From Leucoraja ocellata (taxonomy: Eukaryota), in the NCBI GenBank assembly GCA_036785375.1, contig JAWMAR010000471.1, positions 1,054,001-1,117,815 of the forward strand: a DNA stretch of 63,815 nt, written 5' to 3'. The position numbers and the translations under genes were made by a program. The notes under the pieces are model-generated. The model searched no databases. It was given only the letters and a program-made list of their open reading frames with translations, and was not told the origin of the DNA. Below, in pieces: positions 4,900 to 63,651 of the stretch; the stretch's first letter is position 1; every line of letters starts with the position of its first letter.

Positions 4900-4942
4900 A
4901 TGGGAATCCTCCTATTTTTTGTGCTGTCACTCTGCTTACGCC
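4900..4942 (+). CDS. Leader exon of NAR-TCR V, cassette 1 (MGILLFFVLSLCLR)
   Basis: ATG at 4900, 14 mostly hydrophobic codons + 1 nt, then donor GTGAGT at 4943. Phase 1 matches the V exon acceptor at 5095-5096. Confidence 0.9.
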
Positions 4943-5096
4943 GTGAGTACCGGTCCCCTACTCCCACACAGTGCGGGTTTAACATAAAACAACTCGAGTC
5001 CACTCCGACCTGAATTTCAAACACTGTCCGCGATGTATCCTTCTGCCGTGGTTCGCCTGGAATTCCCACTCACCTCTCCCTGTGTTTCATCTACAG

Positions 5097-5389
5097 ACTC
5101 CTTCAGTCAGTCAGTGACCCAGAGCCCGAATGCGGTGGCTGGAAAAGAGTGTGAGTCCGTCACCATCACCTGCCTTTTCAAAGAAGGTTCCAGTGGCAGC
5201 TACGAATTTAATGTAGGAGGTTTCTTCAAGCAAGCACAACCCGGTGCTAAACGGCAACGGATCACAACAGGTGGACGGTTTGTTGTGTCGTCCAATAAAG
5301 CGGAAAAATCATTTACAGTGAAAATTATTCGTTTGAGAGTTGAGGACATGGCCACATATTACTGTCAAGCTGAGTACAGGTGGAGCATA
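5097..5389 (+). CDS. VNAR-like variable exon (NAR-TCR V), cassette 1, open frame
   Basis: Pyrimidine tract + CTACAG acceptor. Translation SVTQSPNAVAGKECESVTITC...GGRFVVS...LRVEDMATYYC has both canonical Cys, a short FR2-to-GGRF region as in VNAR (no CDR2) and an extra FR1 Cys (KECE). Followed by an RSS. Confidence 0.88.
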
Positions 5390-5428
5390 CACAGTGATGG
5401 GCCTGCGGTTCCAGCAATACAAAAAACC
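5390..5428 (+). other. V recombination signal (22/23-bp spacer)
   Basis: CACAGTG at 5390-5396, then 22 nt + ACAAAAAAC (or 23 nt + CAAAAAACC). Confidence 0.92.
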
Positions 5429-5753
5429 CTGATGGCAGATTCTAGTAGCAACGTGGAGACGCGAGGTAAATCCACCGGGTAAACCCACGGGCCCGCTTTG
5501 TCCCGCCTGCCCTGCATTCTGGGTTGTACCGGATGAAATGCGTGCGATTCAAACAATGGGGTTTCTCTATTTGGCGAGTGCGGCTGGATAATGCCCCCTG
5601 TACCGAAAATGGTGTAAACGAACTGCCATCGAGAATGACCGACCACTCTTCTGATGCACAACTCCAGACGGGATCCAGTTACACAAACTGCAATCTGAAA
5701 AATGCATTCGCTGAACGTTAATCTCCTGCCCGCCCGTCTCGCCGGGCGCCTGG

Positions 5754-5825
5754 GGATTTGAAAGTGACGTGTAACAACGTGTGGCAGTTGGGACAGCCAC
5801 AGTGTAGGAGAGTCGAGTAAAAACT
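5754..5825 (+). other. D segment TGGCAGTTGGGACAGC (5782-5797) flanked by 12-RSS on both sides
   Basis: 5': GGATTTGAA-12-CAACGTG (5754-5781). 3': CACAGTG-12-GTAAAAACT (5798-5825). Lies between V and J; the same structure recurs in cassettes 2 and 4. Confidence 0.8.
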
Positions 5826-6136
5826 CACCCCATTCAAGATATATATTCTTGGGTTTCGGAACCAAAATCATACGATTATTGTTCGTGACGCTGTCGTCCA
5901 AATAAATTACACAGGGATTACCACATTCCATTAACATTCCTTAATAATTGGTTCCCTGTTTGTCAAAACACACCGGCCTGCGTGTGGGAGATCACTCTGC
6001 TCTTAGCTCTGATTCTTAGCGGGAACCGGTCGACCCACCGAGGATTGGGGAGCAAGGACAGTTACTGGTTGGTCTGAAACTCCTGGAATAATTGGGCAGC
6101 GATTCTGATGGTTGCCGGGCAAATCGCGGTGAGGAC

Positions 6137-6239
6137 TGTTATTGTACTACGAGCATCGAGAGACGGGGCACTGTGGCTGCGGCTTCATGGAACACTTACT
6201 ATCAGGATGGGACGGGGACTACGGTGACTGTCGCAGCCG
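6137..6239 (+). other. J segment (6176-6239, AAASWNTYYQDGTGTTVTVAA) with 5' 23-RSS
   Basis: TGTTATTGT-23-CACTGTG (6137-6175), xGxGTxVTV motif, phase-1 donor GTAAGT at 6240. Confidence 0.9.
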
Positions 6240-9575: not shown

Positions 9576-9917
9576 ATTCCATTTACGCGGGTTCCCAGAG
9601 TCCGCCTCACAATCCTCTCTTTCTGGTGACACTGCCACCCTTAACTGCGTATATTCCGGATTCTGCTCGTACACAGTACACTGGTACCGACAGTTCCCAG
9701 GCAGGCTCTGGAATTCCTGCTCCAAAGACACACTTCAGGAAAGCAAGATGAGGAAGAGGCTGCCGAAGGTCGTATTTCTGGTTCTCTCGATCCAGGCCAG
9801 AAATCAGTCAGTTAACTCTCTCTGAAGTACTGCCGAGCGACGAGGCTGTGTATTACTGTGGGATGAGTCCGCGCATCGCACAGTGGCACAGCGCAGCGAG
9901 ATAGCTGTACCAAAACC
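9576..9917 (+). pseudogene. Leaderless supporting TCR-delta-type V, cassette 1 (exon 9576-9878, 23-RSS 9879-9917); frameshifted in this assembly
   Basis: TTTTCCGCAG acceptor; NCVYSGFCSYTVHWYRQ...DEAVYYC; CACAGTG-23-ACCAAAACC. Three 1-nt losses in short homopolymers relative to the 29620 copy, close to a gap, so these may be consensus errors. Confidence 0.75.
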
Positions 9918-10061: not shown

Positions 10062-10269
10062 NNNNNNNNNNNNNNNNNNNNNNNNNNNNNNNNNNNNNNN
10101 NNNNNNNNNNNNNNNNNNNNNNNNNNNNNNNNNNNNNNNNNNNNNNNNNNNNNNNNNNNNNNNNNNNNNNNNNNNNNNNNNNNNNNNNNNNNNNNNNNNN
10201 NNNNNNNNNNNNNNNNNNNNNNNNNNNNNNNNNNNNNNNNNNNNNNNNNNNNNNNNNNNNNNNNNNNNN
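10062..10269. other. Assembly gap
   Basis: N run. Confidence 1.
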
Positions 10270-15950: not shown

Positions 15951-16038
15951 ACTTTCTTAAACTAATGTTTAAACTAAATGTTTGTATTTTCACATAAATC
16001 CGATAATCAAACCACTCGCGTGTTGTTGTGATATTATT

Positions 16039-18557
16039 TTAATGATATTGTTTTACCAATTGCCCTATATTTTTAGCTCGGCGGAATGGATATGTTAGCA
16101 CACGGACCAACTCATCTCTGAACTTGCGCTGTGTCACGGTGTAAATGGCCGTGTTGGTGCAGGAGCTCAGGAGCTGAAGCATAAATCCAACCTTTTCAAA
16201 TTCGAACAGGGGGTTTGGCGAGGACCTGCGTAAGGGGAAATTAAACCATCGAAGCGCAATAAAATGTGCGACACTTGTGGCCCAGAGCAGGATGAAGGAG
16301 CTCGAGATTGCCAGAAGTAAAACGACCGACCGTCTGCGGTTCACCATCTCCTGGTCTTTCTTTTTCTCGCCACCGCTGAGATCTCGGAGGCTCCTGCGGA
16401 CCCGACTGGCCACGGAAATACGTCTGACGGTGAGCGCGTTAAACAACAAAATCAGGCAGAATGGAATCACCGGGGTGAACAACTGTTCGATCCAAGAGAA
16501 CACCATCCATTCGTGACGTATGTAAAAATTTACATCTTTGGCGCAGCCCAGATTCCGTTCACTTAGGAAATAGGGAACGTATGCGAAGGGCAAAGGTGTA
16601 TTCAGAAGGCAGACGAACGGGGTCACTGTCAGAATAACAATCGACGCGGTTCTCTCGGTGCAATATTTGGCCTTCATATTCTTAGTAGAAATCGCAACAA
16701 AGCGATCAAATGTGAACGCGACTGTGAACCATACAGAACATTCCACCGACACGGGAGCCAGGTAGAGTATTATTTTACACACAGGAGTGTAGGTCAATGA
16801 AGTAGGCCACCAATACATATCAGCAATCCGACGAAATACCACGTCCATGAGAAGCACAGAGAGGTCCGCGGTCGCCATGGCTACCATGTAACGAGTGATG
16901 CACTTGGTGAGGCCGCACTTGCCACGGGACAGGATCACAATCGCCATCAGATTCACTGGGAAAGAATGAAAACAGAACTGATTAATTGTGTGGTGTATAG
17001 GTTGGTGGGATGGGAGCAGACGGAGTAATTTAAACCTGTGTCTCCAGTGGTAGAGACTATTTATTTAATTAATCAATATTTGGGACAGTCACCCGTCAAA
17101 CGTTTGCCAAAACTATGTTCAATCAGATATTTATTAAATTCCTGATTACCAAAATTAGTGGCACTGCTTTATGTAGAAAATAATTACATAAAGATGAAAA
17201 TATTGGTACAAACGACAATCCGATTTTAGAAATCAGGGATTTAGTCTGCAAATGAATAAAATCCCGTTTACCAAAATTAGCGGGTTTGCCTTATGTAGTA
17301 ATCTTCACATCATTATGCCAATCGCTTGATGTTGATGTAACATCCATCGTTGATGTAAAATATACAATATTTTCAACCGGTCAGTCAGTGTCTCTGAAAA
17401 ATGGAATTAACAATCCAAATTACCGTCTATTAAATCAGAATGAAGAGGGGATCCTCCCAATATCAAATATGTGATTTAATTTTCCAACATGAAAGGATTT
17501 CAGGGAAGCGCAGCAAATATAATTACAAACACCCTTCACAAACAAGGCTAACAACATAACGGGCATGTATTTTCTGCCGAACAACGGGCGGACCTGTGTT
17601 CTGTCGCTGACAAGAAAAGGTGCTGGAGTATCTCAGTGGCGGAAGCAATATATCTGGAGGACATAGATAGGCGATGTATCAACTCGAGCCCCTTCTTCAG
17701 ACTCTGATCGGAACAATGATCCCAACCCGATACGTCGACTGCGTCGGTCCTCCAGAGATGCTGCAAGACTGGCTGAGTTAACCAGTCATTTGGTTCCACT
17801 GCAAGATATCTGCACGTGTAGTTTATTTTATCTGCACTCCGATTTTGTGGAACAGGTTGTACGTACGACCTTCAAACCTGTCTCTGCGAAATTATCCCTA
17901 TGAGAATTTAAGAGCGAATCATAAAATGCAGTGTCAAATGACTGGACGGGGTGTATTTCTCGTTCTGCCGAGTGCAGTACGCACAGTGGAACAGAAACTG
18001 CCACTCACAGCGAGGACGAAGTTTCGCTTCACCGACCGGCATTGATTTCAGTAAACAGCCGCGAAACTACATTCCTGCCAACGCCAATGAGCGGCATCCA
18101 TCACATACACCATCGCGCTTCCTCGCTCCTAAGATGTACATTGCTTAGTTTATTTTAGTTTAGGAATACAGCGCGAAAACAGGAAAACAGCCCACGTAAT
18201 CCGCGCCGGTCGCGCACACTAACACGAGCCGACACACACCAGGGACAATTTATTTTACTTTTATGGAGCGTGGGAGGTAACCGAAAATCTGGCGGAAAAC
18301 CTAAAAGGTTACGGGGACAAGGTACAAACTCCGCACAGACATCCGCTGTAAGACAGTTGGTCTAACGCTGCGCCGCCATGCAGCCCTAACGCCTGCTAGT
18401 TATTCGGTATGTTCTCTTAACCTTTAATATTCTGCGCGTTTAAAACAGTCTTTGATAGTTCCATGAGATGTACCGACAATTACCTACCAGGTATACCGAT
18501 TACTGCCAGAATCGGGTAATACACATTTTCTATATCCGTGATCTCCTCATAATACAT
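16039..18557 (-). CDS. Two-exon class A orphan GPCR, GPR139/GPR142-like, about 328 aa (exon 1 18557-18488, exon 2 16955-16039)
   Basis: Exon 1 MYYEEITDIENVYYPILAVIGIP, G|GTAGGT donor, joins CAG|TGAAT in phase 1. Seven hydrophobic segments, ATADL in TM2, TFDRF (DRY), CTNTAIY (NPxxY), Cys at the top of TM3 and in ECL2. Confidence 0.88.
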
Positions 18558-24164: not shown

Positions 24165-24686
24165 ATGGGAATCCTCCTGTTGTTTGTGCTGTCACTCTGA
24201 TTACGCCGTGAGTACCGGTCCCCTACTCCCACACAGTGCGGGTTTAACATAAAACAACTCGAGTCCACTCCGACCTGAATTTCAAACGCTGTCCGTGATG
24301 TATCCTTCTGCCGTGGTTCGCCTGGAATTCCCACTCACCTCTCCCTGTGTTTCATCTACAGACTCCTTCAGTCAGTCAGTGACCCAGAGCCCAAATGCGG
24401 TGACTGGAAAAGAGTGTGAGTCCGTCACCATCACCTGCCTTTTCCATGTTGGTTCCCGGGGTTACTACAAATTTAATGTAGGACATTTCTTCAAGCAAGC
24501 ACAACCCGGTGCTAAACGGCAACGGATCACAACAGGTGGACGGTTTGTTGTGTCAACCAATAAATTTACATTTACGTTGAAAATTCTTGGTTTGAGAGTT
24601 GAGGACAAGGCCACATATTACTGTCAAGCTGAGTACAGGTGGAGCATACACAGTGATGGGCCTGCGGTTCCATCAATACAAAAACC
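24165..24686 (+). pseudogene. NAR-TCR V, cassette 2: leader 24165-24207 with in-frame TGA, V exon 24362-24648 open, 22-RSS 24649-24686
   Basis: Leader codon 12 is TGA (24198-24200) where other copies have TGC. V exon SVTQSP...EDKATYYC is open. RSS is CACAGTG-22-ACAAAAACC. Confidence 0.85.
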
Positions 24687-25011: not shown

Positions 25012-25082
25012 GGATTTGAAAGTGACGTGTAACAACGTGTGGCAGCGGGATATCCACAGTGTAGGAGAGTCGAGTAAAAACT
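25012..25082 (+). other. D segment TGGCAGCGGGATATC (25040-25054) with 12/12 RSS, cassette 2
   Basis: GGATTTGAA-12-CAACGTG ... CACAGTG-12-GTAAAAACT. Confidence 0.8.
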
Positions 25083-25393: not shown

Positions 25394-25490
25394 TGTTCGT
25401 GTACTGCGAGCATCGAGAGACGGGGCACTGTGGATTCATGGAGCACTTACTATCAGGAAGGGACGGGGACTACGGTGACTGTCACAGCCG
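25394..25490 (+). other. J segment (25433-25490, DSWSTYYQEGTGTTVTVTA) with 23-RSS, cassette 2
   Basis: TGTTCGTGT-23-CACTGTG (degenerate nonamer); donor GTAAGT at 25491. Confidence 0.88.
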
Positions 25491-29619: not shown

Positions 29620-29925
29620 ATTCCATTTCCGCGGGTTCCCAGAGTCCGCCTCAACAATCCTCTCTTTCTGGTGACACCGCCACCTTTAACTGCGTATATT
29701 CCGGATTCTGCTCGTACACAATACACTGGTACCGACAGTTCCCAGGGCAGGCTCTGGAATTCCTGCTCCAAAGACACACTTCAGGAAAGCAAGACGAGGA
29801 AGAGGCTGCCGAAGGTCATATTTCTGGTTCTGTCGATCCTGCCCAGAAAATCAGTCAGTTAACGCTCTCTGAAGTACTGCCGAGCGACGAGGCTGTGTAT
29901 TACTGTGGGATGTGTCCGCGCATCG
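29620..29925 (+). CDS. Leaderless supporting TCR-delta-type V, cassette 2, intact
   Basis: Phase-1 acceptor in frame with the J donor. DSISAGSQSP...FNCVYSGFCSYTIHWYRQFPGQALEFLL...DEAVYYCGMCPRI, with an extra Cys in CDR1. No leader exon recognised in the J-V intron. Confidence 0.88.
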
Positions 29926-30149: not shown

Positions 30150-30150
30150 G

Positions 30151-30235: not shown

Positions 30236-30237
<2 letters not shown>

Positions 30238-41300: not shown

Positions 41301-41411
41301 CTCCACACACACCTGGATCTCTTGCCATCAGGCAAGAGATATCGAAGCATCAAAGCCCGGACTACGAGGCTGCTAAACAGCTTCCTACCACAGGCTGTGA
41401 GGCTGCTAAAC
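38381..41411 (+). mobile_element. Near full-length Rex1/Babar-like non-LTR retrotransposon (APE + RT), disrupted, 3' end in gap
   Basis: NVRSL / FTESWL / GDFN endonuclease motifs; [15 protein letters not shown]-terminal [10 protein letters not shown]...[12 protein letters not shown]. Frameshift near 39500 and a damaged DFSSAFN region. Absent at the paralogous site near 55266. Confidence 0.82.
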
Positions 41412-41611
41412 NNNNNNNNNNNNNNNNNNNNNNNNNNNNNNNNNNNNNNNNNNNNNNNNNNNNNNNNNNNNNNNNNNNNNNNNNNNNNNNNNNNNNNNNN
41501 NNNNNNNNNNNNNNNNNNNNNNNNNNNNNNNNNNNNNNNNNNNNNNNNNNNNNNNNNNNNNNNNNNNNNNNNNNNNNNNNNNNNNNNNNNNNNNNNNNNN
41601 NNNNNNNNNNN
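41412..41611. other. Assembly gap (200 N)
   Basis: N run. Confidence 1.
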
Positions 41612-42078
41612 GACAGTAATATGTGGCCATGTCCTCAACTCTCAAACGAATAATTTTCACTGTAAATGATTTTTCCGCTTTATTGGACGACACAACAAAC
41701 CGTCCACCTGTTGTGATCCGTTGCCGTTTAGCACCGGGTTGTGCTTGCTTGAAGAAACCTCCTACATTAAATTCGTAGCTGCCACTGGAACCTTCTTTGA
41801 AAAGGCAGGTGATGGTGACGGACTCACACTCTTTTCCAGCCACCGCATTCGGGCTCTGGGTCACTGACTGACTGAAGGAGTCTGTAGATGAAACACAGGG
41901 AGAGGTGAGTGGGAATTCCTGGCGAACCACGGCAGAAGGATACATCGCGGACAGTGTTTGAAATTCAGGTCGGAGTGGACTCGAGTTGTTTTATGTTAAA
42001 CCCGCACTGTGTGGGAGTAGGGGACCGGTACTCACGGCGTAAGCAGAGTGACAGCACAAAAAATAGGAGGATTCCCAT
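41612..42078 (-). CDS. Inverted NAR-TCR leader (42078-42036) and V exon (41881-41612), truncated by gap
   Basis: Reverse complement of 4900-5366. Protein appears identical to cassette 1 V up to YYC. RSS, D and J would lie in or beyond the gap. Confidence 0.85.
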
Positions 42079-42832: not shown

Positions 42833-45800
42833 TGTAGATCAGTGCATGTTCCTTTAACCATAGTGACCTCCCGTATTACTAACCACTCCCCATTGTCTCC
42901 AGTATAATTGTAGTGTCCCCACCTCTAGCTCGCTCTCTAGCTCCAGTGATGACCACGGACAGCTACAGCATAGTGATTAACAGTTACCTAATAAATAGTT
43001 ATAGTAAAAGACTTGTGTGTGTGCAGTAAGTCCTTTTACATGGTGTCATAGCGGTAGACGTGCGTCTCCTGTTCATCGGTTTTTGTTTTATTATTTCTTT
43101 CTCCCAGTCCTTCCCTCCTTTCTTTTATCATGTCCCACCACTGTCGTCGACCAGACACGTTGGTGTTCGACACGGACATTGTCCATCGCTGGACCGTGTT
43201 CCAGCGCGATTACGAGCATTACATTGCTATCGCCCATCCTGATGCCACTCCTGCTGTACAGGCTCACCTATTGCTTAACCTCGCGGGACCTGCAGCTATG
43301 GATCAGTATGCATCGTTCCATTTCGCCGCCGGAGAGGACCGCAACGACCCGGTATGTCTCCTTAATAAGTTCGCTGCCCTCTGTGATATTCCTACCAACA
43401 ACATCATCGAACGCTTCAAATTCTTCCAGAGGCAGCAGCTGCCAGGCGAGCCTGTCGGCACTTACATTGCCGCCTTGCATCACCTGGCTCAGCGCTGCCG
43501 CCTTGACACAATCACCCTTGACGAATTAATTAGGGACGTCCTGGTCAATGGTCTCCGCAACGATAGACTGCGTGAGCAGCTCTTAGTTAAACCCGATCTG
43601 ACACTGCGGGATGCTATGTATTCTGCGCGCATGTCCGAAGCCGTTGGTTCCGTGTCCAGACAGGCTCCCCAGGACATTAACTTCACCGGTCAAGCCGGTC
43701 GCCTGACTACGCGACGCAACCCCGCGGCTCTCCCCATGAAAGTCGCCACCTCCACTGTCCCGCGACGCTGCCCTAACTGCTTTTTTACGGCTCATCCCTC
43801 AAACATTTGCCCCGCACAGGGCAAGACCTGTCTTTCCTGTGGCAAACTCGGGCACTTTTCTGCCGCCTGCCGTTCCCGTGGGAAGCCAGTCCCTGCTCCA
43901 AGAAGGAGTCTAAACAACCTTGCCGAACTAAACAACATTGCACTCCCTGATAGCGCTCTGCTTTCCCAGTACGAGCTGGAGGAGCTCCCCGACTCTGATG
44001 CACTCCCCTCTCGTGAAGATCCAACTATTTGTTTCACTTTTGGGTACACCTGCTCTGATTACGGATCCCTCTGTGCATGTTACTGTGAACGGCCATTCCT
44101 TTTCAGCCAAGGTCGATACTGGCGCTTTCGCCAATGTTATGTCAATAAGCCTTTTCAAGCAGATCAGATCTGGTGAGAAAGTTCTTCCTGGCGACACCTG
44201 CCTCCATGCCTACGGGGGGGGAGTCCTGATTCCCGTGGGTAAGGCAACTCTTATCTGCACAGTTCTAGAGACCTCTCGGCCCCTCACTTTCCACCTGCTG
44301 GACTCTGACAACGTCACCCTGCTGGGCGCCCGTGCGTGTCAGGACTTAGGGCTAGTCTCATTCCACCGCGGCATTCACCTGGTGCAAGCCCCCATGGACC
44401 CCCTGGCCGAGTACCCCGACCGTTTTGATGACGTTCTGGGCAAGCTGCCCTGCGACTACAAGATTGTTGTCGACCCGAGCGTCGACCCGGTGATTCGGCC
44501 GGCACACCGCGTCTCCTTTGCCATGAAGGGCCGCGTGGAGTCTACTCTGCGCGATATGGTGACCATGGGCATCCTCAAGGAGGTGAGCGCTCCCACCGGG
44601 TGGGTCTCCACCATGGTCGTCGCAGCCAAAAAGGACAAAAGCGAGATCCGGATCTGCATTAACCCCAAGGACCTCAACCTTGCCATCAAGCGCCCCCACT
44701 ACCCCATGCGGACGGTAGAGGACGTTGCTGCACAGGTCGGCCCTGCTACTGTCTTTTCAGTCCTAGACGCCAAGAGCTCCTTCTGGCAGATCCCTCTGGA
44801 CGAACGCTCCTCATTCCTCACCACGTTCAGCACTCCCTTCGGCCGGTTCCGTTTCCTCCGCATGCCGTTTGGAATCAACTCTGCCAGCGAGGTTTTCCAG
44901 CGCACCATGGAGCAACTGTTTGCCGGCTTACCGTGCGCCATCATCGTGGATGACATTCTGGTGTACGGGAGGGACGTTGCTGAGCACGACCTGAACCTCC
45001 GCAAAGGCCTGGACAGGGCGCGGGTGATAAACCTCAAGCTGAACCCGAAGAAATGCCGGTTCCGGGTTCCAGAAGTCACTTACGTTGGCCATGTCTTCAC
45101 GGCTGGGGGTCTCAAACCTGACCCCCAGAAAACGTCAGCGGTCACTGACATGCCCGCTCCTACCGACGTCCCTGGCCTGCAGCGTTTCCTGGGCATGGTC
45201 AATTACCTGGGTAAATTCATACCCGACCTCAGTGAACTGAGTGCCCCCCTTCGGGAACTAATCAAAAAGGACTCCGCGTGGGTCTGGCTCCCGCACCACC
45301 AGTCAGCTTTCGTGACTCTGAAGCTAAAGCTTGCCGCTACCCCGACTTTGAAATTTTTCGACCTGCACCGACCCATTATCCTCACTTGCGATGCCTCGAA
45401 GTTTGGTCTCGGTGCCGCTTGTCTGCAGCTTTATGACAACCTTCAGCTGCCCGTCTCCTACGCTTCTCGCACCATGACCCCTGCCGAGCTGCGATATGCC
45501 CAGATTGAAAAAGAGCTGCTTGCCGTGGTCGTCGCTTGCTCCAAGTTTAAAGACTACATCCTCGGCAACTCTTTCACCATCGAGACTGACCACCAGCCGT
45601 TGGTGACAATCCTTAATAAACCTATCCATGTTGCTTCTTCCCGGTTGCAGCGCATGATGCTGCAGCTCCAGCGTTTCACGTTCCAGATCGTCTACTGTAA
45701 GGGCAAAGACATGTTTGTAGCTGACACTCTTTCTCGTGCTCCGCTGCCTTCCGTTGTCCGTCACCCGTACGAATCCTCCGACCTTCTGGTACTAAACGTC

Positions 45801-47461
45801 AACATTGTTCCTTCACAGCAAATGCAGTCCCTGGTCCAACATACTGCTGATGATCCTGCCCTGCAACAACTTGCGGACGTTATCCGCCGTGGTTGGCCTG
45901 ACCGTCGCTCCGAACTGCCTGCTAACGCGGCACCATATTTCCTCGTTCGCGACGAACTGGTGCTTCACGCCGGCGTGGTGGTAAAGGGTCACAAAGTCGT
46001 GGTGCCTGCCGCCCTGCGGGATCATTACTTCCAGTCTGCTCACAGCGGCCACCCCGGGGTGGAAGCTACTTTATCCCAGGCCCAGAGCCAATTCTACTGG
46101 CCAGGTATGGCTCAAGACATCCGTGACAGGGTCTCCGCCTGCGCTGCCTGCAACACCCTGCACCCCCATCAGCAGCGCCAGCCTCTCCTGCAACCGCCGG
46201 CTCCAGAACTCCCATGGATGGCCGTTGCCACCGACCTCTTTGAGTGGCCCCGGTGACCCTCCGGTCCGACAACGGCAGCCAGTTCTCCAGCGACGAGTTC
46301 AAGACCTTTGCTGCCCGTTGGAACTTTAACCACATCACCAGCAGCACCGAGTTTCCTCAAAGCAACGGACTTGCTGAACGGGCCGTTCGTAGTGCCAAGG
46401 AGCTGCTGGAACACTACCGCCTGTTCCGTGCCGATTTCCACCTTGCCCTGCTTAACCTCCGCAACATTTCCCGCGACCCTGCGCTCGGTTCCCCTGCCCA
46501 GCGCCTCATGTCTCGCACCACCAGACCTCCCCTGCCGGTCTCCCAGCAGTCCCTCAAGCCCTCAGTACAAAACCCTGCCACTGTCACTGAGCGCATTGCC
46601 AAAAAACAGGTGACCCAGAAGCGCTCCTTTGACAAATCCGCCCGGCCCCTTCCACGTCTGTTCCCGGGGCAGGTTGTCCGAATGCAGTCCCCCACTGGCC
46701 ACTACCGCCTGGCCGTCGTAGTCGGCGACGCCGGTTCTCCGCGGTCCTACTTCGTCGACTACGAGGGGGCTATCTACCGTCGCTCCCGCCAGCACCTACT
46801 CCTTGTGAATGAGCCCGCTCCGCCTCCCGCGGATCCTTCTCACCCCCCCCCCCCCCATCTCTTCTCGACCTCCCGTTGCCCCTCACGCCCCGGCAACACC
46901 TCGCATGCCACGCACCCTACCTTCACAACTGTCCGCCCGTTCCCCTGCCTCGCCTGTCAAGCCGGCATCGCCCGCAAAACCTACCTCGCCTGCCAAGCCT
47001 GTTTCTCCACCCGGAGCCCCGCGTTCTCCTCCGCCCGCCTCTCCTGCCCATCCCCCGGCTGCTGTCCCTTCTGTTCCCGACGATGAGGAGGAGGGCGGTT
47101 TACGCACCCGCTCTGGCCGGCTGGTCAGGCCGCCTGTCCGCTACGGGGAACACGCATAGTGTTGTACTGTTGCCGGTGCGGTTGGTGTTCTTAGCGTATG
47201 AGCCGTGGTCACTCTGTATAGTACCTGCCATGCTTTTGTTTCCAAGAGGAAGGATGTAGATCAGTGCATGTTCCTTTAACCATAGTGACCTCCCGTATTA
47301 CTAACCACTCCCCATTGTCTCCAGTATAATTGTAGTGTCCCCACCTCTAGCTCGCTCTCTAGCTCCAGTGATGACCACGGACAGCTACAGCATAGTGTCA
47401 AAGAGTTACTTTAATAAACAGTTACAGTAAAAGACTTGTGTGTGCAGTAAGTCATTTTACA
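42833..47461 (+). mobile_element. Gypsy/Ty3 LTR retrotransposon: LTRs 42833-43040 and 47255-47461, gag from 43130, pol about 43938-47159; defective
   Basis: TG...CA LTRs of about 208 bp, PBS TGGTGTCA at 43041, PPT AAGAGGAAGGA before the 3' LTR, CCHC knuckle, protease VDTGA, RT IVDD, RNase H CDAS, integrase HHCC. Deletion/frameshift in the integrase core near 46250. No TSD. Confidence 0.93.
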
Positions 47462-49506: not shown

Positions 49507-51785
49507 TTATTTTAACTTACACTTTACCGATTTAAATATTTTTCCAGTGCAAATGATCGGATATGTTAGTACACGAAACAGCTCCTCTCTAAACTTGCTC
49601 TGGGTCACGGTGTAAATGGCCGTGTTGGTGCAGGAGCTCAGCAACTGAAGCATCTGTCCAACTCTTTCGAATTCTTCCAAAGGGTTTCTCCAAGCCTTGC
49701 GCATAAACACTTTTAAACTTCGAACCGCAATAAAATATGCAACACTTGTGGCCCAGAGCAGGATGAAGGAGCTCGAGATTGCCAGAAGTAAAACGACCGA
49801 GCGTCTGCGGTTCACCATCTCCTGGTCTTTCTATCTCTCCCCACCGCTGAGGTCCCGGAGGTTCCTGCGGAACCGGCTGGCCACGAAAATACGTCTGACG
49901 GTGAGCGCGTTAAACAACAAAATCAGGCAGAATGGAATCACCGGGGTGAACAACTGTTCGGCCCAAGAGAACACCAACCATTCGGCATGAACGTAAAAAT
50001 CTACGAGTTTGAGGCAGCCCAGTTCTCCACCCATTCCGAGATAAGAAGTGTATGCAAAGGGCAAGGGTAGATTTTTGAGGCAGATGAGCGGGCTCACCGT
50101 CAGGATAACAATCGTCGCGGTTCTCTCGGTGCAATATTTGGTTTTCATGTTTTGAGTAGAAATCGCAACAAACCGATCAAAGGTGAAAGCGACCGTGAAC
50201 CACACAGAACAATTCACCGTGACCGATGCCAGGTAGATTGTTATTTTGCACACAGGAGTGTAGGGCAAGGAGGCATGCCACCAATACATATCAGCAATCC
50301 GGTGAAATATCACCTCACAGAAAATCACAGAGAGGTCCGCGGTCGCCATGGCTACCATGTAACGAGTGATGCAATTGGAGAGGCCGCACTTGCCACGGGA
50401 CAGGATCAAAATCGCCATCAGATTCACTGGGAAAGAATGAAAACAGAAACTGATTAATTGTGTGGTGGGTGGGAGCAGACGGAGTCATTTAAACCTGTGT
50501 CGCCAGTGGTAGAGACTGTTTATTTAACGAATCAGTATTTGGGTCAATCATCCGTCAATCGTTTGCCGGAAAGATGTTCATTCAGTAAATTATTAAATTC
50601 TTGATTACCAAAATTAGTGGGATTGCCTTATGTAGAAAATAACTACATAAAGATGAAAATATTGGTACAAGAGGCAATCCGATTTTAGAAATCAGGAAAT
50701 TAATCTGCAAATGGATAACATATCGTTTACCAAGATTAGTGGGAGTGCCTTTTGTACTAATCTTCACAACATTATGCCAACCGTTTGATGTTGATGTAAA
50801 ATATAGAACATGTTCTAGCGGTGAGTCAGTGTCTCTAAAAAATTGAATTAACTATCCAAAGTACCGTCTATCAAACCAGAATTAAGAGGGGATCCCCCCC
50901 AATATAAAATATGTGATTTCAATTTCATACTGGGACATTCAAATGCGCAGTGTCGTTTTTATTGCTGAGACATGGGCAACTTTTGCGTCGGGGCATTGAG
51001 TCAATCGCGGTCTGAATTAACGCGGTCTGTTTTCCATTGGGCCTTCGAGAATGCATCTCCCAACACGGGGCCAAGGAAAGGGATACAGTGAAGCGCAGCA
51101 AATATAATTACAAACACCCTTCGCAAACACGGCTAACAACATAACGGGCAGGTGTTTTCTGCCGAACAGCGGGCGGGCCTGTGTACTGCACCTGACAAGA
51201 GCCAATGGTGGAGTAACTCAGTGGCGCAAGTAATATCTCTGGAGAACATCGATAGGAGACGTAGTAAAATCAATACGGGCATTGATTTTAGTAAAAAGCC
51301 GCGAGGGCTACATTTCTGCCAGCTTCAATGAGCGGCATCCATCACATATACAAACGCGCTACCTCGCTCCTGAGGTGGATATCGCTTACTTTATTTTAGT
51401 TTAGGAATGCAGCGCGAAAACACAACACCGGCTCACCTAATCCGCATCGATCGTGCACACTCACAACAACAACACACACAAGGGACAATGTATTTTACTT
51501 ATATGGAGCGTGGGAGCAAACCGAAGATCTCGGGGAAAACCCAAAAGGATACGGGGAGAACGTACAAACTCCGTATAGACAAGCGCTGTAAGACATTTAT
51601 TCTAGCGCCGCGCCAGCGTGCCGCCCTAACCCCCGCTGGGCTACTCGCTATGTCCTTTTAACCTTTAATATTCTGCGCTCTTCAAACATGAGATGTGCCG
51701 ACAATTACCTACCAGGTATACCGATTGCTGCCAGAATCGGATAATACACAAGTCCTATTTTTTCCTCGATCGCAACAACGTCCAT
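49507..51785 (-). pseudogene. GPCR paralog 3 (exon 1 51785-51713, exon 2 50426-49507) with in-frame TAG in ICL3
   Basis: Exon 1 MDVVAIEEKIGLVYYPILAAIGIP. LSGGER*KDQEM (AAG>TAG at 49831-49833); both ORF halves are in the same frame. Confidence 0.82.
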
Positions 51786-57940: not shown

Positions 57941-58462
57941 ATGGGAATCATCCTGTTGTTTGTGCTGTCACTCTGCTTACGCCGTGAGTACCGGTCCCCT
58001 ACTCCCACACAGTGCGGGTTTAACATAAAACAACTCGAGTCCACTCCGACCTGAATTTCAAACGCTGCCCGCGATGTGTCCTTCTGCCATAGTTCGCCTC
58101 GAATTCCCACTCACCTCTCCCTGTGTTTAATCTACAGACTCCTTCAGTCAGTCAGTGACCCAGAGCCCGAATGCGGTGGCTGGAAAAGAGTGTGAGTTCG
58201 TCACCATCACCTGCCTTTTCCAAGAAGGTTCCCGGGGTTACTACGAATTTAATGTAGGACATTTCTTCAAGCAAGCACAACCCGGTGCTAAACGGCAACG
58301 GATCACAACAGGTGGACGGTTTGTTGTGTCAACCAATAAATTTACATTTACGTTGAAAATTCTTGGTTTGAGAGTTGAGGACATGGCCACATATTACTGT
58401 CAAGCTGAGTACAGGTGGAGCATACACAGTGATGGGCGTGCGGTTCCAGCAATACAAAAACC
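57941..58462 (+). CDS. NAR-TCR V, cassette 4: leader 57941-57983, V exon 58138-58424, 22-RSS 58425-58462; intact
   Basis: MGIILLFVLSLCLR with GTGAGT donor; SVTQSPNAVAGKECEFVTITC...EDMATYYCQAEYRWSI; CACAGTG-22-ACAAAAACC. Confidence 0.88.
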
Positions 58463-58787: not shown

Positions 58788-58858
58788 GGATTTGAAAGTG
58801 ACGTGTAACAACGTGTGGCAGCTGGATATCCACAGTGTAGGAGAGTCGAGTAAAAACT
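58788..58858 (+). other. D segment TGGCAGCTGGATATC (58816-58830) with 12/12 RSS, cassette 4
   Basis: Same RSS pair as the other D segments. Confidence 0.8.
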
Positions 58859-59169
58859 CACCCCATTCAAGATATATATTCTTGGGTTCCCCAACCAAAA
58901 TATAACGATTATTGTTCGTGACGCTGTAGTCCAGATAAATTACACAGGGATTACCACATTCCGTTAACATTCCTTAATAATTGGTTCCGTGTTTGTCAAA
59001 ACGCACAAGCCTGCGTGTGGGAGATCACTCTGCTCTTAGCACTGTTTCTTAGCGGGAACCGGTCGACCCACCGAGGTTTGGGGAGCAAGGCCATTTACTG
59101 GTTGGTCTGAAACTCCTGGAATAATTGGACAGCGATTCTAATGGTTGCCGGGCAAATCTATGTGAGGAC

Positions 59170-59266
59170 TGTTCGTGTACTGCGAGCATCGAGAGACGGG
59201 GCACTGTGGATTCATGGAGCACTTACTATCATGAAGGGACGGGGACTACGGTGACTGTCACAGCCG
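59170..59266 (+). other. J segment (59209-59266, DSWSTYYHEGTGTTVTVTA) with 23-RSS, cassette 4
   Basis: TGTTCGTGT-23-CACTGTG; donor GTAAGT at 59267. Confidence 0.88.
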
Positions 59267-62200
59267 GTAAGTACCCTAAACCTCTCTTATCCACAGTTGT
59301 TCTTGGAAATATTCAGTTCCCTTTAACATTGGATCACGAGGCATCAATTGCTTTCCAATTGAAACAGATTCTAGTGCCAGTAACTTGGCCTAGATGTTAC
59401 GGTACACGTGAGTCCAATGAGAGGATATGCCGGGCTCCCCGGGAGCACAACGTGAATCAGGTTGAAGAATAGCTACTTCCCCAAAGGATCGAGAACACCA
59501 TACCGTGCCAACCACAGCTATGAAATTCTATGCAGACACAAGTAAATGCGGACGCTGACATCGGATTCTGAAGTCTAGATTACAAATGTCGGCTATCAAT
59601 GTTCTCCTGAAATGCTGCCTGACCCACGGAGTTATTCCTACCACACCCGCTGTGAGCGAAAGCCTGTGAAACAAACTATGTCTTACTCCAGGAAACAGAG
59701 GGAGGTTGGCGGGAGAGTAGATGGGCTGTGAGTGAATCTGGACCATCTGAAAACATTCCACTAACTGAAATCAAACGACAGCTGGCAGACCTGTTGACAC
59801 GGTTCTCTGGAGGGTGGAAATATGAACCGCAAGCAGCAAAAAGCGGGCATTCTAGATTAAAAACCAAAATCGTTCTTCAATTAAATGAAGGTAAAATGTA
59901 GAAGGACGTGGCCCAGTGAACGAAAAAAAACACAACTCTTGATACATAGAGGGCAAAGCATTTATCCCGGGTTGTGTAAATTCCACTTAAAAGATGACCT
60001 TCCAGTTGTTAATCACAGAAGGCTGTGGAGGCCAAGTCAGGGGGAAAATAAGGCAGAGATATATAGCTTTTTGATTAGTCGAGGCGTCGGAGGTTTTGAC
60101 ATTGCGGAGAAGGCAGAAGATTGCGGTTTGGAGGGTGACATAGTTCAGCTATTATTGAATGGCTGAGTGGGCCTGATGGGTCGAATAGAACTTGACTATA
60201 TCCAGGAAGGGATACACTTCAGTCAAGCTGTGGGGAGAATGACTAGTTCTATTGTTTTAACGCCAAGAACCAATTACAAAATGCTAGAGAACCGAGTAAG
60301 ATAATTTGTCTCATTCACCGGATCCCGACTCACTGAATCAGCTCCACTATTATTCCGTGCTCGCTTTGACTGTTCCCACAGCCTGGAATATTTCCAATTT
60401 CACTTTCATAATCAGAGTTTGACCTCGCGTATATTCGTCAGTGATTTTCTCCACGGTGGCGCAACGGTAACGGTAGAGGTGCTGCCTAACAGCGCGTTTA
60501 GCACCAGAGACCCGAGTACGATCCAGACTCCGGGTGTTGGCTGCACAGAGTTTGTATGTTCTCCCCATAATCTGTGTGGGTTTTCTCCGAGATAGAACCA
60601 TAGAAACATAGAAAATATGTGCAGGATTAGGCTATTCGGCCCTTCGAGCCTGCACCGCCATTCAATATGATCATGGCTGATCATCCAACTCAGTATCCTG
60701 TACCTGCCTTCTCTCCATACCCCCTGATCCCTTTAGCCACAAGAGCCACATCTAACTCCCTCTTAAATATCGCCAATGAACTGGTCTCAACTACCTTCTG
60801 CGGGAGAGAATTCCACAGATTCACCACTCTCTGTGTGAAAAAAGATTTCCTCATCTCTGTCCTAAAAGATTTCCCCTTTATCATTAAACTGTGACCCCTT
60901 GTTCTGGACTTCTCCAACATCGGGAACAATCTACCTGCATCTAGCCTGTCCAACCCCTTAAGAATTTTGTAAGTTTCTATAAGATCCCCCCTCAATCTTC
61001 TAATTTCTAGCGAGTACAAACCGAGTTTTCCCACTGAGAGGAGGGAAGATGCAAACAAGGGGACATGACTTGAGAATTAAGGGACAGAAGTTTAAGGGTA
61101 ACATGAGGGGGAACTTCTTTACTCAGAGAGTGATGGCTGTGTGGAATGAGCTTCCAGCGAAGGTGGTGGAGGCAGGTTCGTTTTTATCATTTAAAAATAA
61201 ATTGGACAGTTATATGGACGAGAAAGGAGTGGAGTGTTATGGTCTGAGCGCAGGTATATGGGACTAGGGGAGAATACGTGTTCGGCACGGACTAGAAGGG
61301 TCGAGATGGCCTGTTTCCGTGCTGTAATTGGTATATGGTTATATGTTATATGGTTATATGACTATCCAGTCTTTCTTCATATGAAAGTCCTGACATCCCA
61401 GGAATCAGTCTGGTGAACGTTCTCTGTACTCCCTCTATGGCAAGAATGTCTTTCCTCAGAGTAGGAGACCAAAACTGTACGCAATACTCCAGGTGTGGTC
61501 TCACCAAGACACTGTACAACTGCAGTAGAACCTCCCTGCTCCTATAATCTGGGGCTTCTTATAATAGGGACACTCGAAATACGGACAGTGTTGAAGGGTT
61601 ATTGGCGCTCTATAAATGTAAATATTCCACCGTGTGTGTAGGATAGTGTTAATGTGCGGGGATTGCAGGGCGGCGCGGACTTGGTAGGCCGAAGGGCCCG
61701 TTTCCGCGCTGTGTCCCTAAACTAAACTGAACTGAACTAAACTGAACTGAACTGAACTGAACTCCTTGAAGGTGGAATCTCATATAGATAGGGTGGTAAA
61801 GAAAGCTTTTGGTATGCTAGCCTTTATAAATCAGAGCATTGAGTATAGAAGCTGGGATGTAATGTTAAAATTGTACAAGGGGTGGTGAGACCAAATCTGG
61901 AGTATGGTGTACAATTTTGGTCGCCCAATTATAGGAAGGATGTCAACAAAATAGAGAGAGTACAGAGGAGATTTACTAGAATGTTGCCTAGGTTTCAACA
62001 ACTAAGTTACAGAGATAGGTTGAATAAGTTAGGTCTTTATTCTCTGGAGCGCAGAAGGTTAAGGGGGGAATTGATAGAGGTCTTTAAAATGATGAGAGGG
62101 ATAGACAGAGTTGATATGGACAAGCTTTTCCCTTTGAGAATAGGGAAGATTCAAACAAGAGGACATGACTTCAGAATTAAGGGACAGAAGTTTAGGGGTA

Positions 62201-63307
62201 ACATGAGGGGGAACTTCTTTACTCAGAGAGTGGTAGCGGTGTGGAATGAGCTTCCAGTGGAAGTGGTGGCGGCATGTTCGTTGGTATAATGTGGATAAGT
62301 GTGAGGTTATGCATTCTGGTGGCAAAAACAGCAAAGCAGACTATTATCTAAATGGTGGCCGACTAGGAAAAGGGGAGATGCAGCGAGACCTGGTTGTCAT
62401 GGTACACCAGTCATTGAAAGTAGGCATGCAGGTGCAGCAGGCAGTGAAGAAAGCGAATGGTATGTTAGCTTTCATTGCAAAAGGATACGAGTATAGGAGC
62501 AGGGAGGTTCTACTGCAGTTGTACAGGGTCTTGGCGAGACCACACCTGGAGTATTGCGTACAGTTTTGGTCTCCAAATCTGAGGAAGGACATTATTGCCA
62601 TAGAGGAGTGCACAGAAGGTTCACCAGACTGATAACACCAGACAAGGGTCGCAGCTTAAGGATAAGGGGGAAATCCTTTAAAACTGAGACGAGAAGAACT
62701 TTTACACACAGAGTGGTGAATCTCTGGAACTCTCTGCCACGGAGGGTAGTCGAGGCCAGTTCATTGGCTATATTTAAGAGGGAGTTAGATGTGACCCTTG
62801 TGGCTAAGGGGATCAGAGGGTATGGAGAGAAGGCAGGTACGGGATACTGAGTTGGATGATCAGCCATGATCATATTGAATGGCGGTGCAGGCTCGAAGGG
62901 CCGAATGGCCTCTACTTCTGCACCTAATTTCTATGTTTCTATGTATCATTTAAAAATAAATTGGATAGGCATATGGATGAGAAGAGAATGGAGGGTTATG
63001 GTATGAGTGCAGGCAGGTGGGACTAAGGGAAAAAAAGTTGTTCGGCACGGACTTGTAGGGCCGAGATGGCCTGTTTCCGTGCTGTAATTGTTCCGTGCTG
63101 TAAACCAAACTATACTAAAGAAAACTAACCTAAACGAAATTAAATCTCCACTCGGCGAGGGAACAATTCAAGGATCCATAAATAACGTTTCCATACATTT
63201 TGCAAACATGTGATGAACTACCGGAGACGGTAACTAGTTTCTGTGTGTGTCACAGTCTCCAACAGTCAATGTTAAAACAATAACTATTCCCCTGTTATTT
63301 TCCGCAG

Positions 63308-63651
63308 ATACATTTCCGCGGGTTCCCAGAGTCCGCCTCAACAATCCTCTCTTTCTGGTGACACTGCCACCTTTAACTGCGTATATTCCGGATTCTGCTC
63401 GTACACAGTACACTGGTACCGACAGTTCCCAGGGCAGGCTCTGGAATTCCTGCTCCAAAGACACACTTCAGGAAAGCAAGACGAGGAAGAGGCTGCCGAA
63501 GGTCGTATTTCTGGTTCTCTCGATCCTGCCCAGAAAATCAGTCAGTTAACGCTCTCTGAATTACTGCCGAGCGACGAGGCTGTGTATTACTGTGGGATGA
63601 GTCCGCGCATCGCACAGTGGCACAGCGCAGTGAGATAGCTGTACCAAAACC
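63308..63651 (+). pseudogene. Leaderless supporting V, cassette 4 (exon 63308-63612, 23-RSS 63613-63651) with a 1-nt loss at the exon start
   Basis: AG|ATACATTTCC versus AG|ATTCCATTTCC in cassette 2 shifts the frame. The rest reads intact (AGSQSP...YYCGMSPRI). Confidence 0.78.

What the first reader, a model, noticed from the sequence alone, without database searches (positions are those of the whole stretch)
4900..63651. Orphan GPCR genes alternate with NAR-TCR cassettes inside a rearranging T-cell receptor locus
Seen: the order is cassette 1(+), GPCR1(-), cassette 2(+), GPCR2(-), inverted V, GPCR3(-), cassette 4(+). GPCR1 and GPCR3 sit head-to-head with the next leader, 5.6 and 6.2 kb away, so the duplicating unit appears to be [GPCR + V-D-J-V]. 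Established: supporting Vs rearrange to TCR-delta D/J. Inference: if D/J/C-delta lie downstream in the same orientation, that join deletes every downstream GPCR and brings the adjacent upstream GPCR near the TCR enhancer. GPCR content or expression could then be tied to the cassette a T cell uses. I know of no description of this linkage but cannot check the literature. Passive hitch-hiking in tandem duplications is the null explanation.
Basis: partly seen in the sequence, partly recalled or inferred. Interest (0 to 1): 0.88.

Follow-up and report, generated by a model that had tools for sequence, protein, structure and literature searches.

The report
GPCR genes between skate NAR-TCR cassettes
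In a skate T-cell-receptor locus, an orphan receptor gene has been copied along with each antibody-like receptor cassette, most likely as a passenger of tandem duplication and not as a working partner.

Summary
The layout is real. Three full NAR-TcR cassettes (+), one inverted leader+V fragment and three two-exon class-A GPCR genes (-) alternate as described. GPCR start codons lie 5.6 and 6.2 kb from the next leader. The units are collinear paralogues, so GPCR and cassette were duplicated together. Their histories differ, though. The two GPCR lineages predate the Leucoraja/Amblyraja split (dS 0.15-0.29), while cassettes differ by only 4-9%, which implies later homogenisation. The GPCRs show purifying selection (dN/dS 0.38-0.63). 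They are neither clear GPR139 orthologues nor olfactory receptors. As assembled, 0 of 3 cassettes is fully in frame and GPCR3 carries a stop. Four RNA runs gave no reads on GPCR2 exons or on the supporting-V control, so that test is uninformative. Eight literature searches found no description. The nearest precedent is olfactory receptor genes between mammalian TRAV genes. Unchecked first-stage notes report the same interleaving on many other windows of this genome. Best reading: passive co-amplification. Functional coupling is unsupported.

The parts
4900..4942 (+). Cassette 1 leader exon (43 nt, phase 1, MGILLFFVLSLCLR)
5097..5389 (+). Cassette 1 NAR-type V exon, open; 23-type RSS heptamer starts at 5390
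   Evidence: best single-domain PDB hits are VNAR domains
5782..5797 (+). Cassette 1 putative D (16 nt). The 3' heptamer at 5798 has an 11/12 spacer; the 5' RSS is weak
6176..6239 (+). Cassette 1 J (..YYQDGTGTTVTVAA) with a 5' 23-type RSS and a GT donor
9576..9878 (+). Cassette 1 supporting V exon (no leader, AG acceptor). Three 1-bp deletions relative to its paralogues break the frame. 23-RSS at 9879
10062..10269 (.). Assembly gap 1; continuity across it is unknown
16039..16955 (-). GPCR1 exon 2 (TM1 end to C-terminus, 305 codons, open)
   Evidence: (7tm_1, E 3e-17)
18488..18557 (-). GPCR1 exon 1 (ATG at 18557, 70 nt, GTAGGT donor)
24165..24207 (+). Cassette 2 leader exon with an in-frame TGA at 24198-24200
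24362..24648 (+). Cassette 2 NAR-type V exon, open; perfect heptamer and nonamer at 24649 (22-nt spacer)
25040..25054 (+). Cassette 2 putative D
25433..25490 (+). Cassette 2 J (DSWSTYYQEGTGTTVTVTA), 5' 23-type RSS, GT donor
29620..29925 (+). Cassette 2 supporting V exon, in phase with J and open; 23-RSS at 29926
   Evidence: (V-set, E 7e-14)
34445..35364 (-). GPCR2 exon 2 (306 codons, open)
35628..35700 (-). GPCR2 exon 1 (ATG at 35700, 73 nt)
38392..41411 (+). LINE-type retroelement (two ORFs; the RT ORF runs into gap 2). It interrupts the GPCR2 unit where the other units continue to a cassette
41412..41611 (.). Assembly gap 2. LINE on its left and inverted V on its right are unrelated flanks
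41612..42078 (-). Inverted leader (42078-42036) plus NAR-type V exon (41881-41612, cut off by the gap after YYC). It belongs to a 1.2-kb inverted copy (41612-42832) that is 98.6% identical to 4150-5366
43017..47086 (+). LTR-retrotransposon-like gag/pol/integrase ORFs between the inverted V and the GPCR3 unit
49507..50426 (-). GPCR3 exon 2 with an in-frame TAA at 49833-49831 (in the putative third intracellular loop)
51713..51785 (-). GPCR3 exon 1 (ATG at 51785)
57941..57983 (+). Cassette 4 leader exon, open
58138..58424 (+). Cassette 4 NAR-type V exon, open; perfect RSS at 58425
58816..58830 (+). Cassette 4 putative D
59209..59266 (+). Cassette 4 J
63308..63612 (+). Cassette 4 supporting V exon. 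A 1-bp deletion just after the acceptor puts it out of phase with J. 23-RSS at 63613

Best explanation
The window is part of the V region of a rajid skate's TCR alpha/delta locus. It is built from a tandemly repeated unit; cassette 1 leader to cassette 2 leader is 19,265 bp. Each unit holds one NAR-TcR cassette on the + strand: leader, IgNAR-like V, D, J, then a leaderless supporting delta-type V. On the - strand it holds one independent two-exon class-A GPCR gene from an orphan family that is greatly expanded in elasmobranchs.

Shown: the parts, their order and orientation, the collinear paralogy of the units, purifying selection on the GPCRs, and lesions in several members.

Inferred: one GPCR gene came to lie inside the V array in a batoid or rajid ancestor. 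Unequal crossing-over then amplified V cassette and GPCR together. Later gene conversion or secondary duplications homogenised the cassette part. Retroelements inserted, one cassette was broken and partly inverted, and some copies decayed, which is birth-and-death evolution. The GPCRs work, if at all, as ordinary receptors with their own promoter and ligand specificity. V(D)J joining of a supporting V removes or inverts the GPCR genes lying between it and D/J-delta on that chromosome, purely as a by-product.
For: Layout and counts: 3 GPCR, 4 NAR V and 3 supporting V.

Collinear blocks between units:
- 16022-17484 = 49495-50926 (83%)
- 18035-19070 = 51275-52318 (81%)
- 23396-23816 = 56858-57287 (87%)
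- 23815-30129 = 57570-63815 (94.6%)
- 1-6634 = 19267-25916 (95.6%)
- 34385-35434 = 49447-50484 (91%)
- 36085-37707 = 52053-53658 (79%)

The GPCRs are separate genes with their own ATG, GT-AG intron and stop. The 5.6-6.2 kb to the next leader is largely LINE fragments.

GPCR dN/dS is 0.63, 0.58 and 0.38, with synonymous change in excess (Fisher p 0.016, 0.003, 0.0004). Change is concentrated in codon windows 121-150 and 241-270.

In the tree, the window's GPCRs form a rajid clade of 7 (support 100) with two lineages, each holding a Leucoraja erinacea and an Amblyraja radiata protein. The two L. erinacea proteins share one 208-kb contig and the two A. radiata proteins one chromosome. Shark relatives form species-specific expansions.

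The family is large: 1892 proteins with E<=0.001 among 3424 candidates.

Decay: GPCR3 stop, cassette 2 leader stop, and supporting V1 and V4 frame-broken.

Precedent for GPCR genes among TCR V genes: OR10G2 and OR4E2 between human TRAV1-1, TRAV1-2 and TRAV2, and three Olfr genes between mouse TRAV1 and TRAV2 (passages of PMC4574546).
Against: No expression data were obtained for any tissue, so a lymphocyte role is not excluded. In one search the supporting-V control was as blank as the GPCR.

In the single-cell run X4, minus-strand depth of 15.6 (bin 34160-34359) and 3.2 (bin 34360-34559) lies just downstream of GPCR2's stop on the gene's own strand. This could be a 3' end of GPCR2 or of a close paralogue. 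I favour a repeat, for three reasons. The reads sit on a 140-bp insertion absent from GPCR3's flank. All reads carry 34352 A>G. The bulk runs show both orientations and nothing on the coding exons.

Two of three GPCRs are intact and selected, and the 1:1 pairing with cassettes is reported by unchecked first-stage notes across roughly 900 kb and on other pieces of this genome. That is more regular than a few stray passengers.

The lesions in supporting V1 are all 1-bp homopolymer changes next to a gap and may be assembly errors.

Linkage to TCR V genes in other species could not be tested.
Confidence: 0.7

Rival explanations
1. Functional coupling. V(D)J joining of a given cassette edits the GPCR gene content of that T cell and places the retained upstream GPCR under TCR-locus control. 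GPCR paralogue expression would then be tied to cassette use.
For: The head-to-head arrangement of GPCR and next leader at 5.6 and 6.2 kb is conserved in two units. GPCRs are intact and under selection in 2 of 3 copies. Variation is concentrated in the putative extracellular loops. Unchecked notes suggest the pairing is locus-wide. A possible 3'-end signal appears next to GPCR2 in one single-cell run.
Against: No reads fell on GPCR2 coding exons in 4 of 4 RNA runs. As assembled, none of the 3 full cassettes here can make an in-frame chain. GPCR lineages are much older than the present cassette copies, so pairs are not stable partners. The spacer between GPCR and leader is mostly LINE debris. 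The position and orientation of D/J/C-delta are unknown. The same topology in mammals (OR genes among TRAV) has no function attached to it in the passages read.
Confidence: 0.08
2. The GPCRs are functionless, decaying passengers: pseudogenes or genes never expressed, kept only because the array keeps duplicating.
For: GPCR3 has an in-frame stop. dN/dS of 0.58-0.63 for GPCR1 against the others is only mildly below 1. There is no RNA support.
Against: Two of three have complete ORFs, ATG and consensus splice sites. Synonymous change significantly exceeds non-synonymous change in all 3 pairs. The TM3/ICL2, TM5 and TM7 segments are nearly invariant while the loops vary. Proteins 89-95% identical to GPCR1 are annotated in two other skate genera.
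Confidence: 0.12
3. Assembly artefact: GPCR-bearing and TCR-bearing sequence were wrongly joined, or the inverted V is a contig-end artefact.
For: There are two N gaps. The inverted V sits at the very edge of gap 2 and is 98.6% identical to cassette 1. The homopolymer indels in supporting V1 lie next to gap 1.
Against: GPCR1-cassette 2-GPCR2 and inverted V-GPCR3-cassette 4 each lie in uninterrupted sequence. The three units are diverged paralogues (79-96%), not collapsed copies. DNA runs of one study hold 38-46% of the sampled words of the GPCR1 region.
Confidence: 0.03

Closest known systems
NAR-TcR (doubly rearranging TCR-delta with an N-terminal IgNAR-like V). Features taken from passages of PMC1845163, which cites Criscitiello et al. 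2006 (not held)
   Same: The NAR V has a leader, a Cys in the a-b loop (..GKEC..) and no Trp in the WYRK position (..GGFFKQ..). The supporting V has no leader and a Cys in CDR1 (..SGFCSY..). Each V has its own RSS-flanked rearrangement.
   Different: Here the cassettes are seen in germline context, in a skate, repeated in tandem, each with a GPCR gene between it and the next. All 3 full copies carry a frame or stop lesion as assembled.
Olfactory receptor genes interspersed among the 5' TRAV genes of mammals (human OR10G2 and OR4E2; mouse Olfr1507-1509; sheep). Passages of PMC4574546 and PMC2275272
   Same: Class-A seven-transmembrane receptor genes lie between rearranging V genes of the TCR alpha/delta locus. 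They would be lost from a chromosome that rearranges an upstream V.
   Different: In mammals there are two or three OR genes at the 5' edge, not co-amplified with V genes. The skate genes are not ORs: Pfam gives only 7tm_1 and no 7tm_4, and none of the 53 PDB matches is an OR. They also repeat 1:1 with the cassettes.
Trypsinogen genes embedded in the mammalian TCR beta locus (recalled from memory; no call)
   Same: Tandemly duplicated non-immune genes sit inside a rearranging TCR locus and are deleted by V-to-DJ joining without known consequence.
   Different: They are not paired one-to-one with V segments.
GPR139 (the automatic name of the nearest annotated proteins)
   Same: Rhodopsin-type 7TM receptor; weak full-length similarity to human GPR139 chains (E 6e-6, 29 bits).
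   Different: GPR139 is not the best solved match (5-HT2B 3e-8, CCK-B 8e-7, galanin R1 2e-6). The family has 1892 hits with E<=0.001 in the protein collection, and relatives fall into species-specific expansions in the tree. By contrast, the GPR139 abstracts listed describe a conserved gene.

Membership tests
NAR-TcR cassette | N-terminal V has its own leader peptide exon | tested here: met
   A 43-nt leader exon with ATG and GT donor is present in all 4 copies. The cassette 2 copy has an in-frame TGA.
NAR-TcR cassette | NAR-TcR V has a Cys in the a-b loop and lacks the Trp of the WYRK motif (PMC1845163 passages) | tested here: met
   All 4 V exons read ..GKEC.. in the a-b loop and ..FFKQ.. 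at the WYRK position.
NAR-TcR cassette | N-terminal V is IgNAR-like | tested here: met
   The best single-domain PDB matches are VNAR / New Antigen Receptor variable domains, E 1e-14 to 1e-12. Pfam V-set, E 4e-7.
NAR-TcR cassette | Own D and J with RSSs obeying the 12/23 rule | tested here: met
   V 23-type RSS (0-1 mismatch), D 3' 12-type RSS and J 5' 23-type RSS. The D 5' RSS is weak and was read by eye.
NAR-TcR cassette | Supporting TCR-delta V lacks a leader, is entered by splicing from J, and has a Cys in CDR1 | tested here: met
   J ends in phase 1 at a GT donor. The supporting V starts at a polypyrimidine-AG acceptor and is in phase in cassette 2. CDR1 reads ..SGFCSY... A hidden leader exon was not searched for exhaustively.
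NAR-TcR cassette | Supporting V is of TCR-delta type | tested here: inconclusive
   Pfam V-set, E 7e-14. The PDB ranking is dominated by multi-domain antibody constructs and does not discriminate. The protein search gave 1 hit, a Callorhinchus Ig-like protein.
NAR-TcR cassette | Able to encode an in-frame double-V chain | tested here: not met
   0 of 3 full cassettes as assembled: supporting V1 is frame-broken, leader 2 has a stop, and supporting V4 is out of phase. Assembly error is not excluded for V1.
NAR-TcR cassette | Supporting V rearranges to D/J-delta and is expressed with C-delta | not testable with these tools
   No D/J/C-delta lies in the window. No reads fell on the supporting V in 4 RNA runs.
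Class A (rhodopsin-type) GPCR | Match to Pfam 7tm_1 above the curated cut-off | tested here: met
   63.4, 62.3 and 46.1 bits against a cut-off of 30.5.
GPR139 orthologue | Human GPR139 is the closest characterised receptor by a clear margin | tested here: not met
   GPR139 chains score E 6e-6, ranked behind 5-HT2B, CCK-B and galanin R1. There were 0 matches at E<=1e-8.
Vertebrate olfactory receptor (7tm_4) | Match to Pfam 7tm_4 or to solved ORs | tested here: not met
   Only 7tm_1 was reported at E<=0.01. None of the 53 PDB matches is an OR.
Tandem segmental duplication unit [GPCR + cassette] | Collinear homology across GPCR, spacer and cassette between units | tested here: met
   Collinear blocks are listed. 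Identity is uneven: 79-87% outside the cassettes and 91-96% within them.
Tandem segmental duplication unit [GPCR + cassette] | GPCR and cassette of a unit show equal divergence (one duplication event) | tested here: not met
   GPCR dS is 0.15-0.29, against 4-9% cassette divergence that includes non-coding DNA. The GPCR lineages predate the skate genus split.

The most novel reading that the evidence does not exclude
In skates, RAG-mediated joining in the TCR alpha/delta locus somatically removes or inverts a clonotype-specific block of an orphan GPCR family that was co-amplified 1:1 with V cassettes. Each T-cell clone would then carry, and perhaps express, a GPCR set determined by its V choice. 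That would be a second, receptor-level consequence of V(D)J recombination. The physical editing is close to certain if these Vs rearrange. The novel part is that it matters to the cell.
Probability: 0.07. Interest if true: 0.85.

Novelty: new variant of a known kind. Interest (0 to 1): 0.45.

Why it matters
NAR-TcR cassettes are known, and so are stray receptor genes inside mammalian TCR loci. What appears undescribed in the library searched is a whole orphan GPCR family amplified in step with V cassettes inside a rearranging locus. Eight searches found nothing on it.

If it is only hitch-hiking, it is a clear case of an antigen-receptor array's duplication machinery inflating an unrelated gene family. 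It would also explain part of the 'GPR139-like' expansion in elasmobranch annotations.

It also makes a sharp question testable with ordinary data: do T cells of a skate lose or invert defined GPCR genes according to V usage, and are those genes expressed in lymphocytes at all?

Tried and rejected
Cross-species synteny. The look-up of encoding contigs for the A. radiata and L. erinacea GPCRs was closed. As a substitute I searched the supporting V exon in the protein collection, hoping for V proteins on the same contigs. That gave 3 candidates and 1 hit (Callorhinchus), with nothing from skates, so the route failed. The third protein search was not spent on the NAR V because germline V segments evidently are not in that collection.

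RNA test. One stretch (29760-35759) was chosen to hold GPCR2 plus part of supporting V2 as a T-cell control. In 4 of 4 runs the two supporting-V bins and the six bins 34560-35759 had zero depth. All substantial depth lay on retroelement pieces. This result speaks neither for nor against expression.

GPR139 orthology and OR kinship were both rejected. The atlas search only repeated automatic names.

The idea of a single clean duplication unit was rejected because divergences are unequal. The idea that the 27919/61634 and 9249 minus-strand RSS-like hits mark J segments was rejected. The real J lies at 25433/59209/6176.

Literature. The Criscitiello 2006 paper (PMC1458790) and PMC7909615 are not held. 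For PMC12227049 I read only passages found by term search: 0 occurrences of GPR139, GPCR or 'G protein'. Its supplementary locus maps, and all other supplements, were not opened and might show genes inside elasmobranch TCR alpha/delta loci. For all other papers I saw search listings and abstract starts, plus passages of PMC4574546, PMC2275272 and PMC1845163.

Full report
WHAT IS THERE.

A tblastn of three window-derived queries against the window finds three GPCR copies on the minus strand. It also finds four IgNAR-like V exons (three plus, one minus) and three supporting V exons (plus). An RSS scan and direct reading give the anatomy of each full cassette:
- a 43-nt leader exon
- a NAR-type V exon ending in a 23-type RSS (perfect heptamer and nonamer in cassettes 2 and 4)
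- a 15-16-nt putative D with a 12-type RSS on its 3' side and a weak one on its 5' side
- a J with a 5' 23-type RSS, ending in phase 1 at a GT donor
- about 3.3-4.1 kb further on, a leaderless V exon entered through a polypyrimidine-AG acceptor and closed by a 23-type RSS

The features that passages of PMC1845163 give for NAR-TcR are all present. The NAR V has a leader, a Cys in the a-b loop and no Trp in WYRK. The supporting V has no leader and a Cys in CDR1. The N-terminal V's best single-domain PDB matches are VNAR domains.

THE GPCRs.

Each copy matches Pfam 7tm_1 and nothing else at E<=0.01. The long ORFs lack TM1 and an ATG. Annotated skate relatives showed a short first exon. I found it 0.26-1.5 kb upstream of each copy, with an ATG, a GTAGGT donor and a matching AG acceptor.

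GPCR1 and GPCR2 are open. GPCR3 has a TAA at 49833-49831.

The nearest proteins are automatic 'probable GPR139' models from Leucoraja erinacea (95%) and Amblyraja radiata (89%). The family is large: 1892 proteins with E<=0.001 among 3424 candidates, and nearly all of the 120 listed are elasmobranch. Against solved structures there is no match at E<=1e-8. At 0.01, human GPR139 (6e-6) ranks behind 5-HT2B, CCK-B and galanin R1, and none of the 53 matches is an olfactory receptor. 'Orphan class-A GPCR' is therefore the right label. 'GPR139' is only a name.

GAPS.

Gap 2 (41412-41611) has a LINE RT ORF running in from the left on the plus strand. The inverted V exon runs in from the right on the minus strand and is cut after YYC. 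These flanks are unrelated, so the through-N ORFs mean nothing, and the inverted V's end and RSS are unseen.

Gap 1 (10062-10269) follows a complete cassette 1. Homology to cassettes 2 and 4 runs to its left edge, and the right flank has no counterpart in the window.

The two key arrangements, GPCR(-)...cassette(+)...GPCR(-) and V(-)...GPCR(-)...cassette(+), each lie in uninterrupted sequence.

DUPLICATION HISTORY.

Self-alignment shows that the units are collinear through GPCR, GPCR upstream region, pre-cassette region and cassette. This supports a [GPCR + cassette] unit.

Identity is uneven, however. Between the GPCR1/cassette 2 and GPCR3/cassette 4 units it is 81-87% up to 23815/57570, then 94.6% across the whole 6.3-kb cassette including its introns. 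Cassettes 1 and 2 share 95.6% over 6.6 kb, reaching to the window's first base.

GPCR synonymous divergence is 0.15-0.29. A maximum-likelihood tree was built from 55 of the 120 listed proteins plus the three window copies. It puts the window's GPCRs in a rajid clade of 7 (support 100) with two lineages. GPCR1 groups with L. erinacea P0001 and A. radiata P0002 (99). GPCR2 and GPCR3 group with P0004 and P0003 (93). The two GPCR types therefore predate the split of these genera, whereas the cassette copies look young or homogenised. Shark relatives form species-specific expansions.

The GPCR2 unit is collinear with the GPCR3 unit up to 38380/55267. A LINE then intervenes, followed by the gap and then a 1.2-kb inverted promoter-leader-V piece that is 98.6% identical to cassette 1. 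An LTR-type element (43.0-47.1 kb) follows. The third cassette is thus broken. Its inverted remnant lies at a contig edge, which lowers confidence in it somewhat.

SELECTION AND INTEGRITY.

Pairwise dN/dS on exon 2 is 0.63, 0.58 and 0.38. Synonymous change is significantly in excess. Non-synonymous change is concentrated in codon windows 121-150 and 241-270. Judged by the usual class-A layout, these are the second and third extracellular loops (an inference; no topology was computed). This pattern fits working receptors with diversifying ligand contacts.

Against a working locus: as assembled, no full cassette can give an in-frame double-V chain. Supporting V1 has three 1-bp homopolymer deletions. 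The cassette 2 leader has TGC>TGA. Supporting V4 is out of phase from its first codon. The V1 lesions sit beside a gap and may be errors.

EXPRESSION.

No indexed RNA run holds the GPCR1 region. DNA runs of one study hold 38-46% of its sampled words.

I laid four raw RNA runs from four studies on 29760-35759. They were one single-cell run, one oligo-dT run and two cDNA runs. The number of reads laid was 3399, 1508, 2903 and 8926, almost all 95-99% alike and only partly fitting, on retroelement pieces. The supporting-V bins and the six bins covering most of GPCR2 exon 2, its intron and exon 1 had zero depth in 4 of 4 runs. Because the T-cell control is blank too, the test says nothing about lymphocytes.

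One loose thread remains. The single-cell run has minus-strand depth of 15.6 and 3.2 in the two bins just past GPCR2's stop. These reads sit on a 140-bp insertion that GPCR3's flank lacks. All of them carry 34352 A>G, and the bulk runs show both orientations. I therefore read it as a repeat, but a 3' end of a GPCR2-like transcript is not excluded.

CONTEXT.

Unchecked first-stage notes on this genome describe the same GPCR/V interleaving on many windows. They range from about 650 kb before to 245 kb beyond this one, and on other pieces. One note claims a D/J-delta cluster downstream that faces the Vs. I could not read outside the window.

Eight literature searches found nothing on GPCR genes in cartilaginous-fish TCR loci. 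PMC12227049, on elasmobranch TCR alpha/delta-IgH linkage, has no occurrence of GPCR terms in its main text. Its supplements were not seen.

The nearest precedent is OR genes between the first TRAV genes of human, mouse and sheep and near the opossum locus. From memory, trypsinogen genes in the TCR beta locus are another.

VERDICT.

The deletion scenario is conditional on unseen D/J-delta geometry and is in any case a by-product of locus topology. Nothing here ties GPCR expression to cassette use. The most likely reading is passive co-amplification of an independently functioning orphan GPCR family inside the V array (0.7). The arrangement itself seems undescribed and is cheaply testable, which keeps moderate interest.

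Noticed in passing
window 24198-24200: The cassette 2 leader codon 12 is TGA where the other three copies have TGC. This is a substitution, so it is unlikely to be a homopolymer sequencing error. It would silence an otherwise intact cassette.
   Followed up: partly
window 9576-9878 and 63308-63312: Supporting V1 differs from V2 and V4 by three 1-bp deletions, all in short homopolymers and all within 500 bp of gap 1. Supporting V4 has a 1-bp deletion plus a substitution right after its splice acceptor, which puts it out of phase with J4.
   Followed up: partly
window 4967, 24232, 58008 (+) and 42011 (-): A perfect RSS heptamer, a 12-nt spacer and a nonamer-like A-rich 9-mer (3 mismatches) sit in the leader intron of all four NAR V copies. 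This may be a cryptic RSS or chance.
   Followed up: no
window 24649-25490 (and the same parts of cassettes 1 and 4): The RSS spacer pattern of the NAR part is V-23, 12-D-12, 23-J, which from memory is the heavy-chain-like arrangement. The J lacks the usual F/W-G-x-G and reads ..(Q/H)(D/E)GTGT... J1 has a coding end 6 nt longer than J2 and J4, and the three D segments differ.
   Followed up: partly
window 5097-5389, 41612-41881 versus 24362-24648, 58138-58424: There are two NAR V types. Cassette 1 and the inverted V share one type. Cassettes 2 and 4 share another, with different CDR1 and a 6-nt shorter FR3. V types and GPCR lineages do not alternate in a simple two-unit super-repeat.
   Followed up: partly
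window 34245-34384: A 140-bp insertion lies in GPCR2's 3' flank and is absent from GPCR3's flank. It contains three AATAAA motifs on the minus strand. RNA reads from all four runs pile up around it, every one with 34352 A>G. It is probably a short interspersed repeat.
   Followed up: partly
window 38392-41411: A LINE-type element has two long ORFs. The second has RVT_1 and a PF09004 (ALKBH8_N) match and runs into gap 2. Many 0.3-0.7-kb fragments of a related RT family are scattered through every unit.
   Followed up: partly
window 43017-47086: An LTR-retrotransposon-like element has gag-like, RT/RNase H/integrase-zinc and integrase-core ORFs in three different frames. GC rises to 0.56-0.58 here.
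   Followed up: no
window 35365-35627 versus 16956-18487 and 50427-51712: The GPCR intron is about 0.26 kb in GPCR2 but about 1.5 and 1.3 kb in GPCR1 and GPCR3.
   Followed up: no
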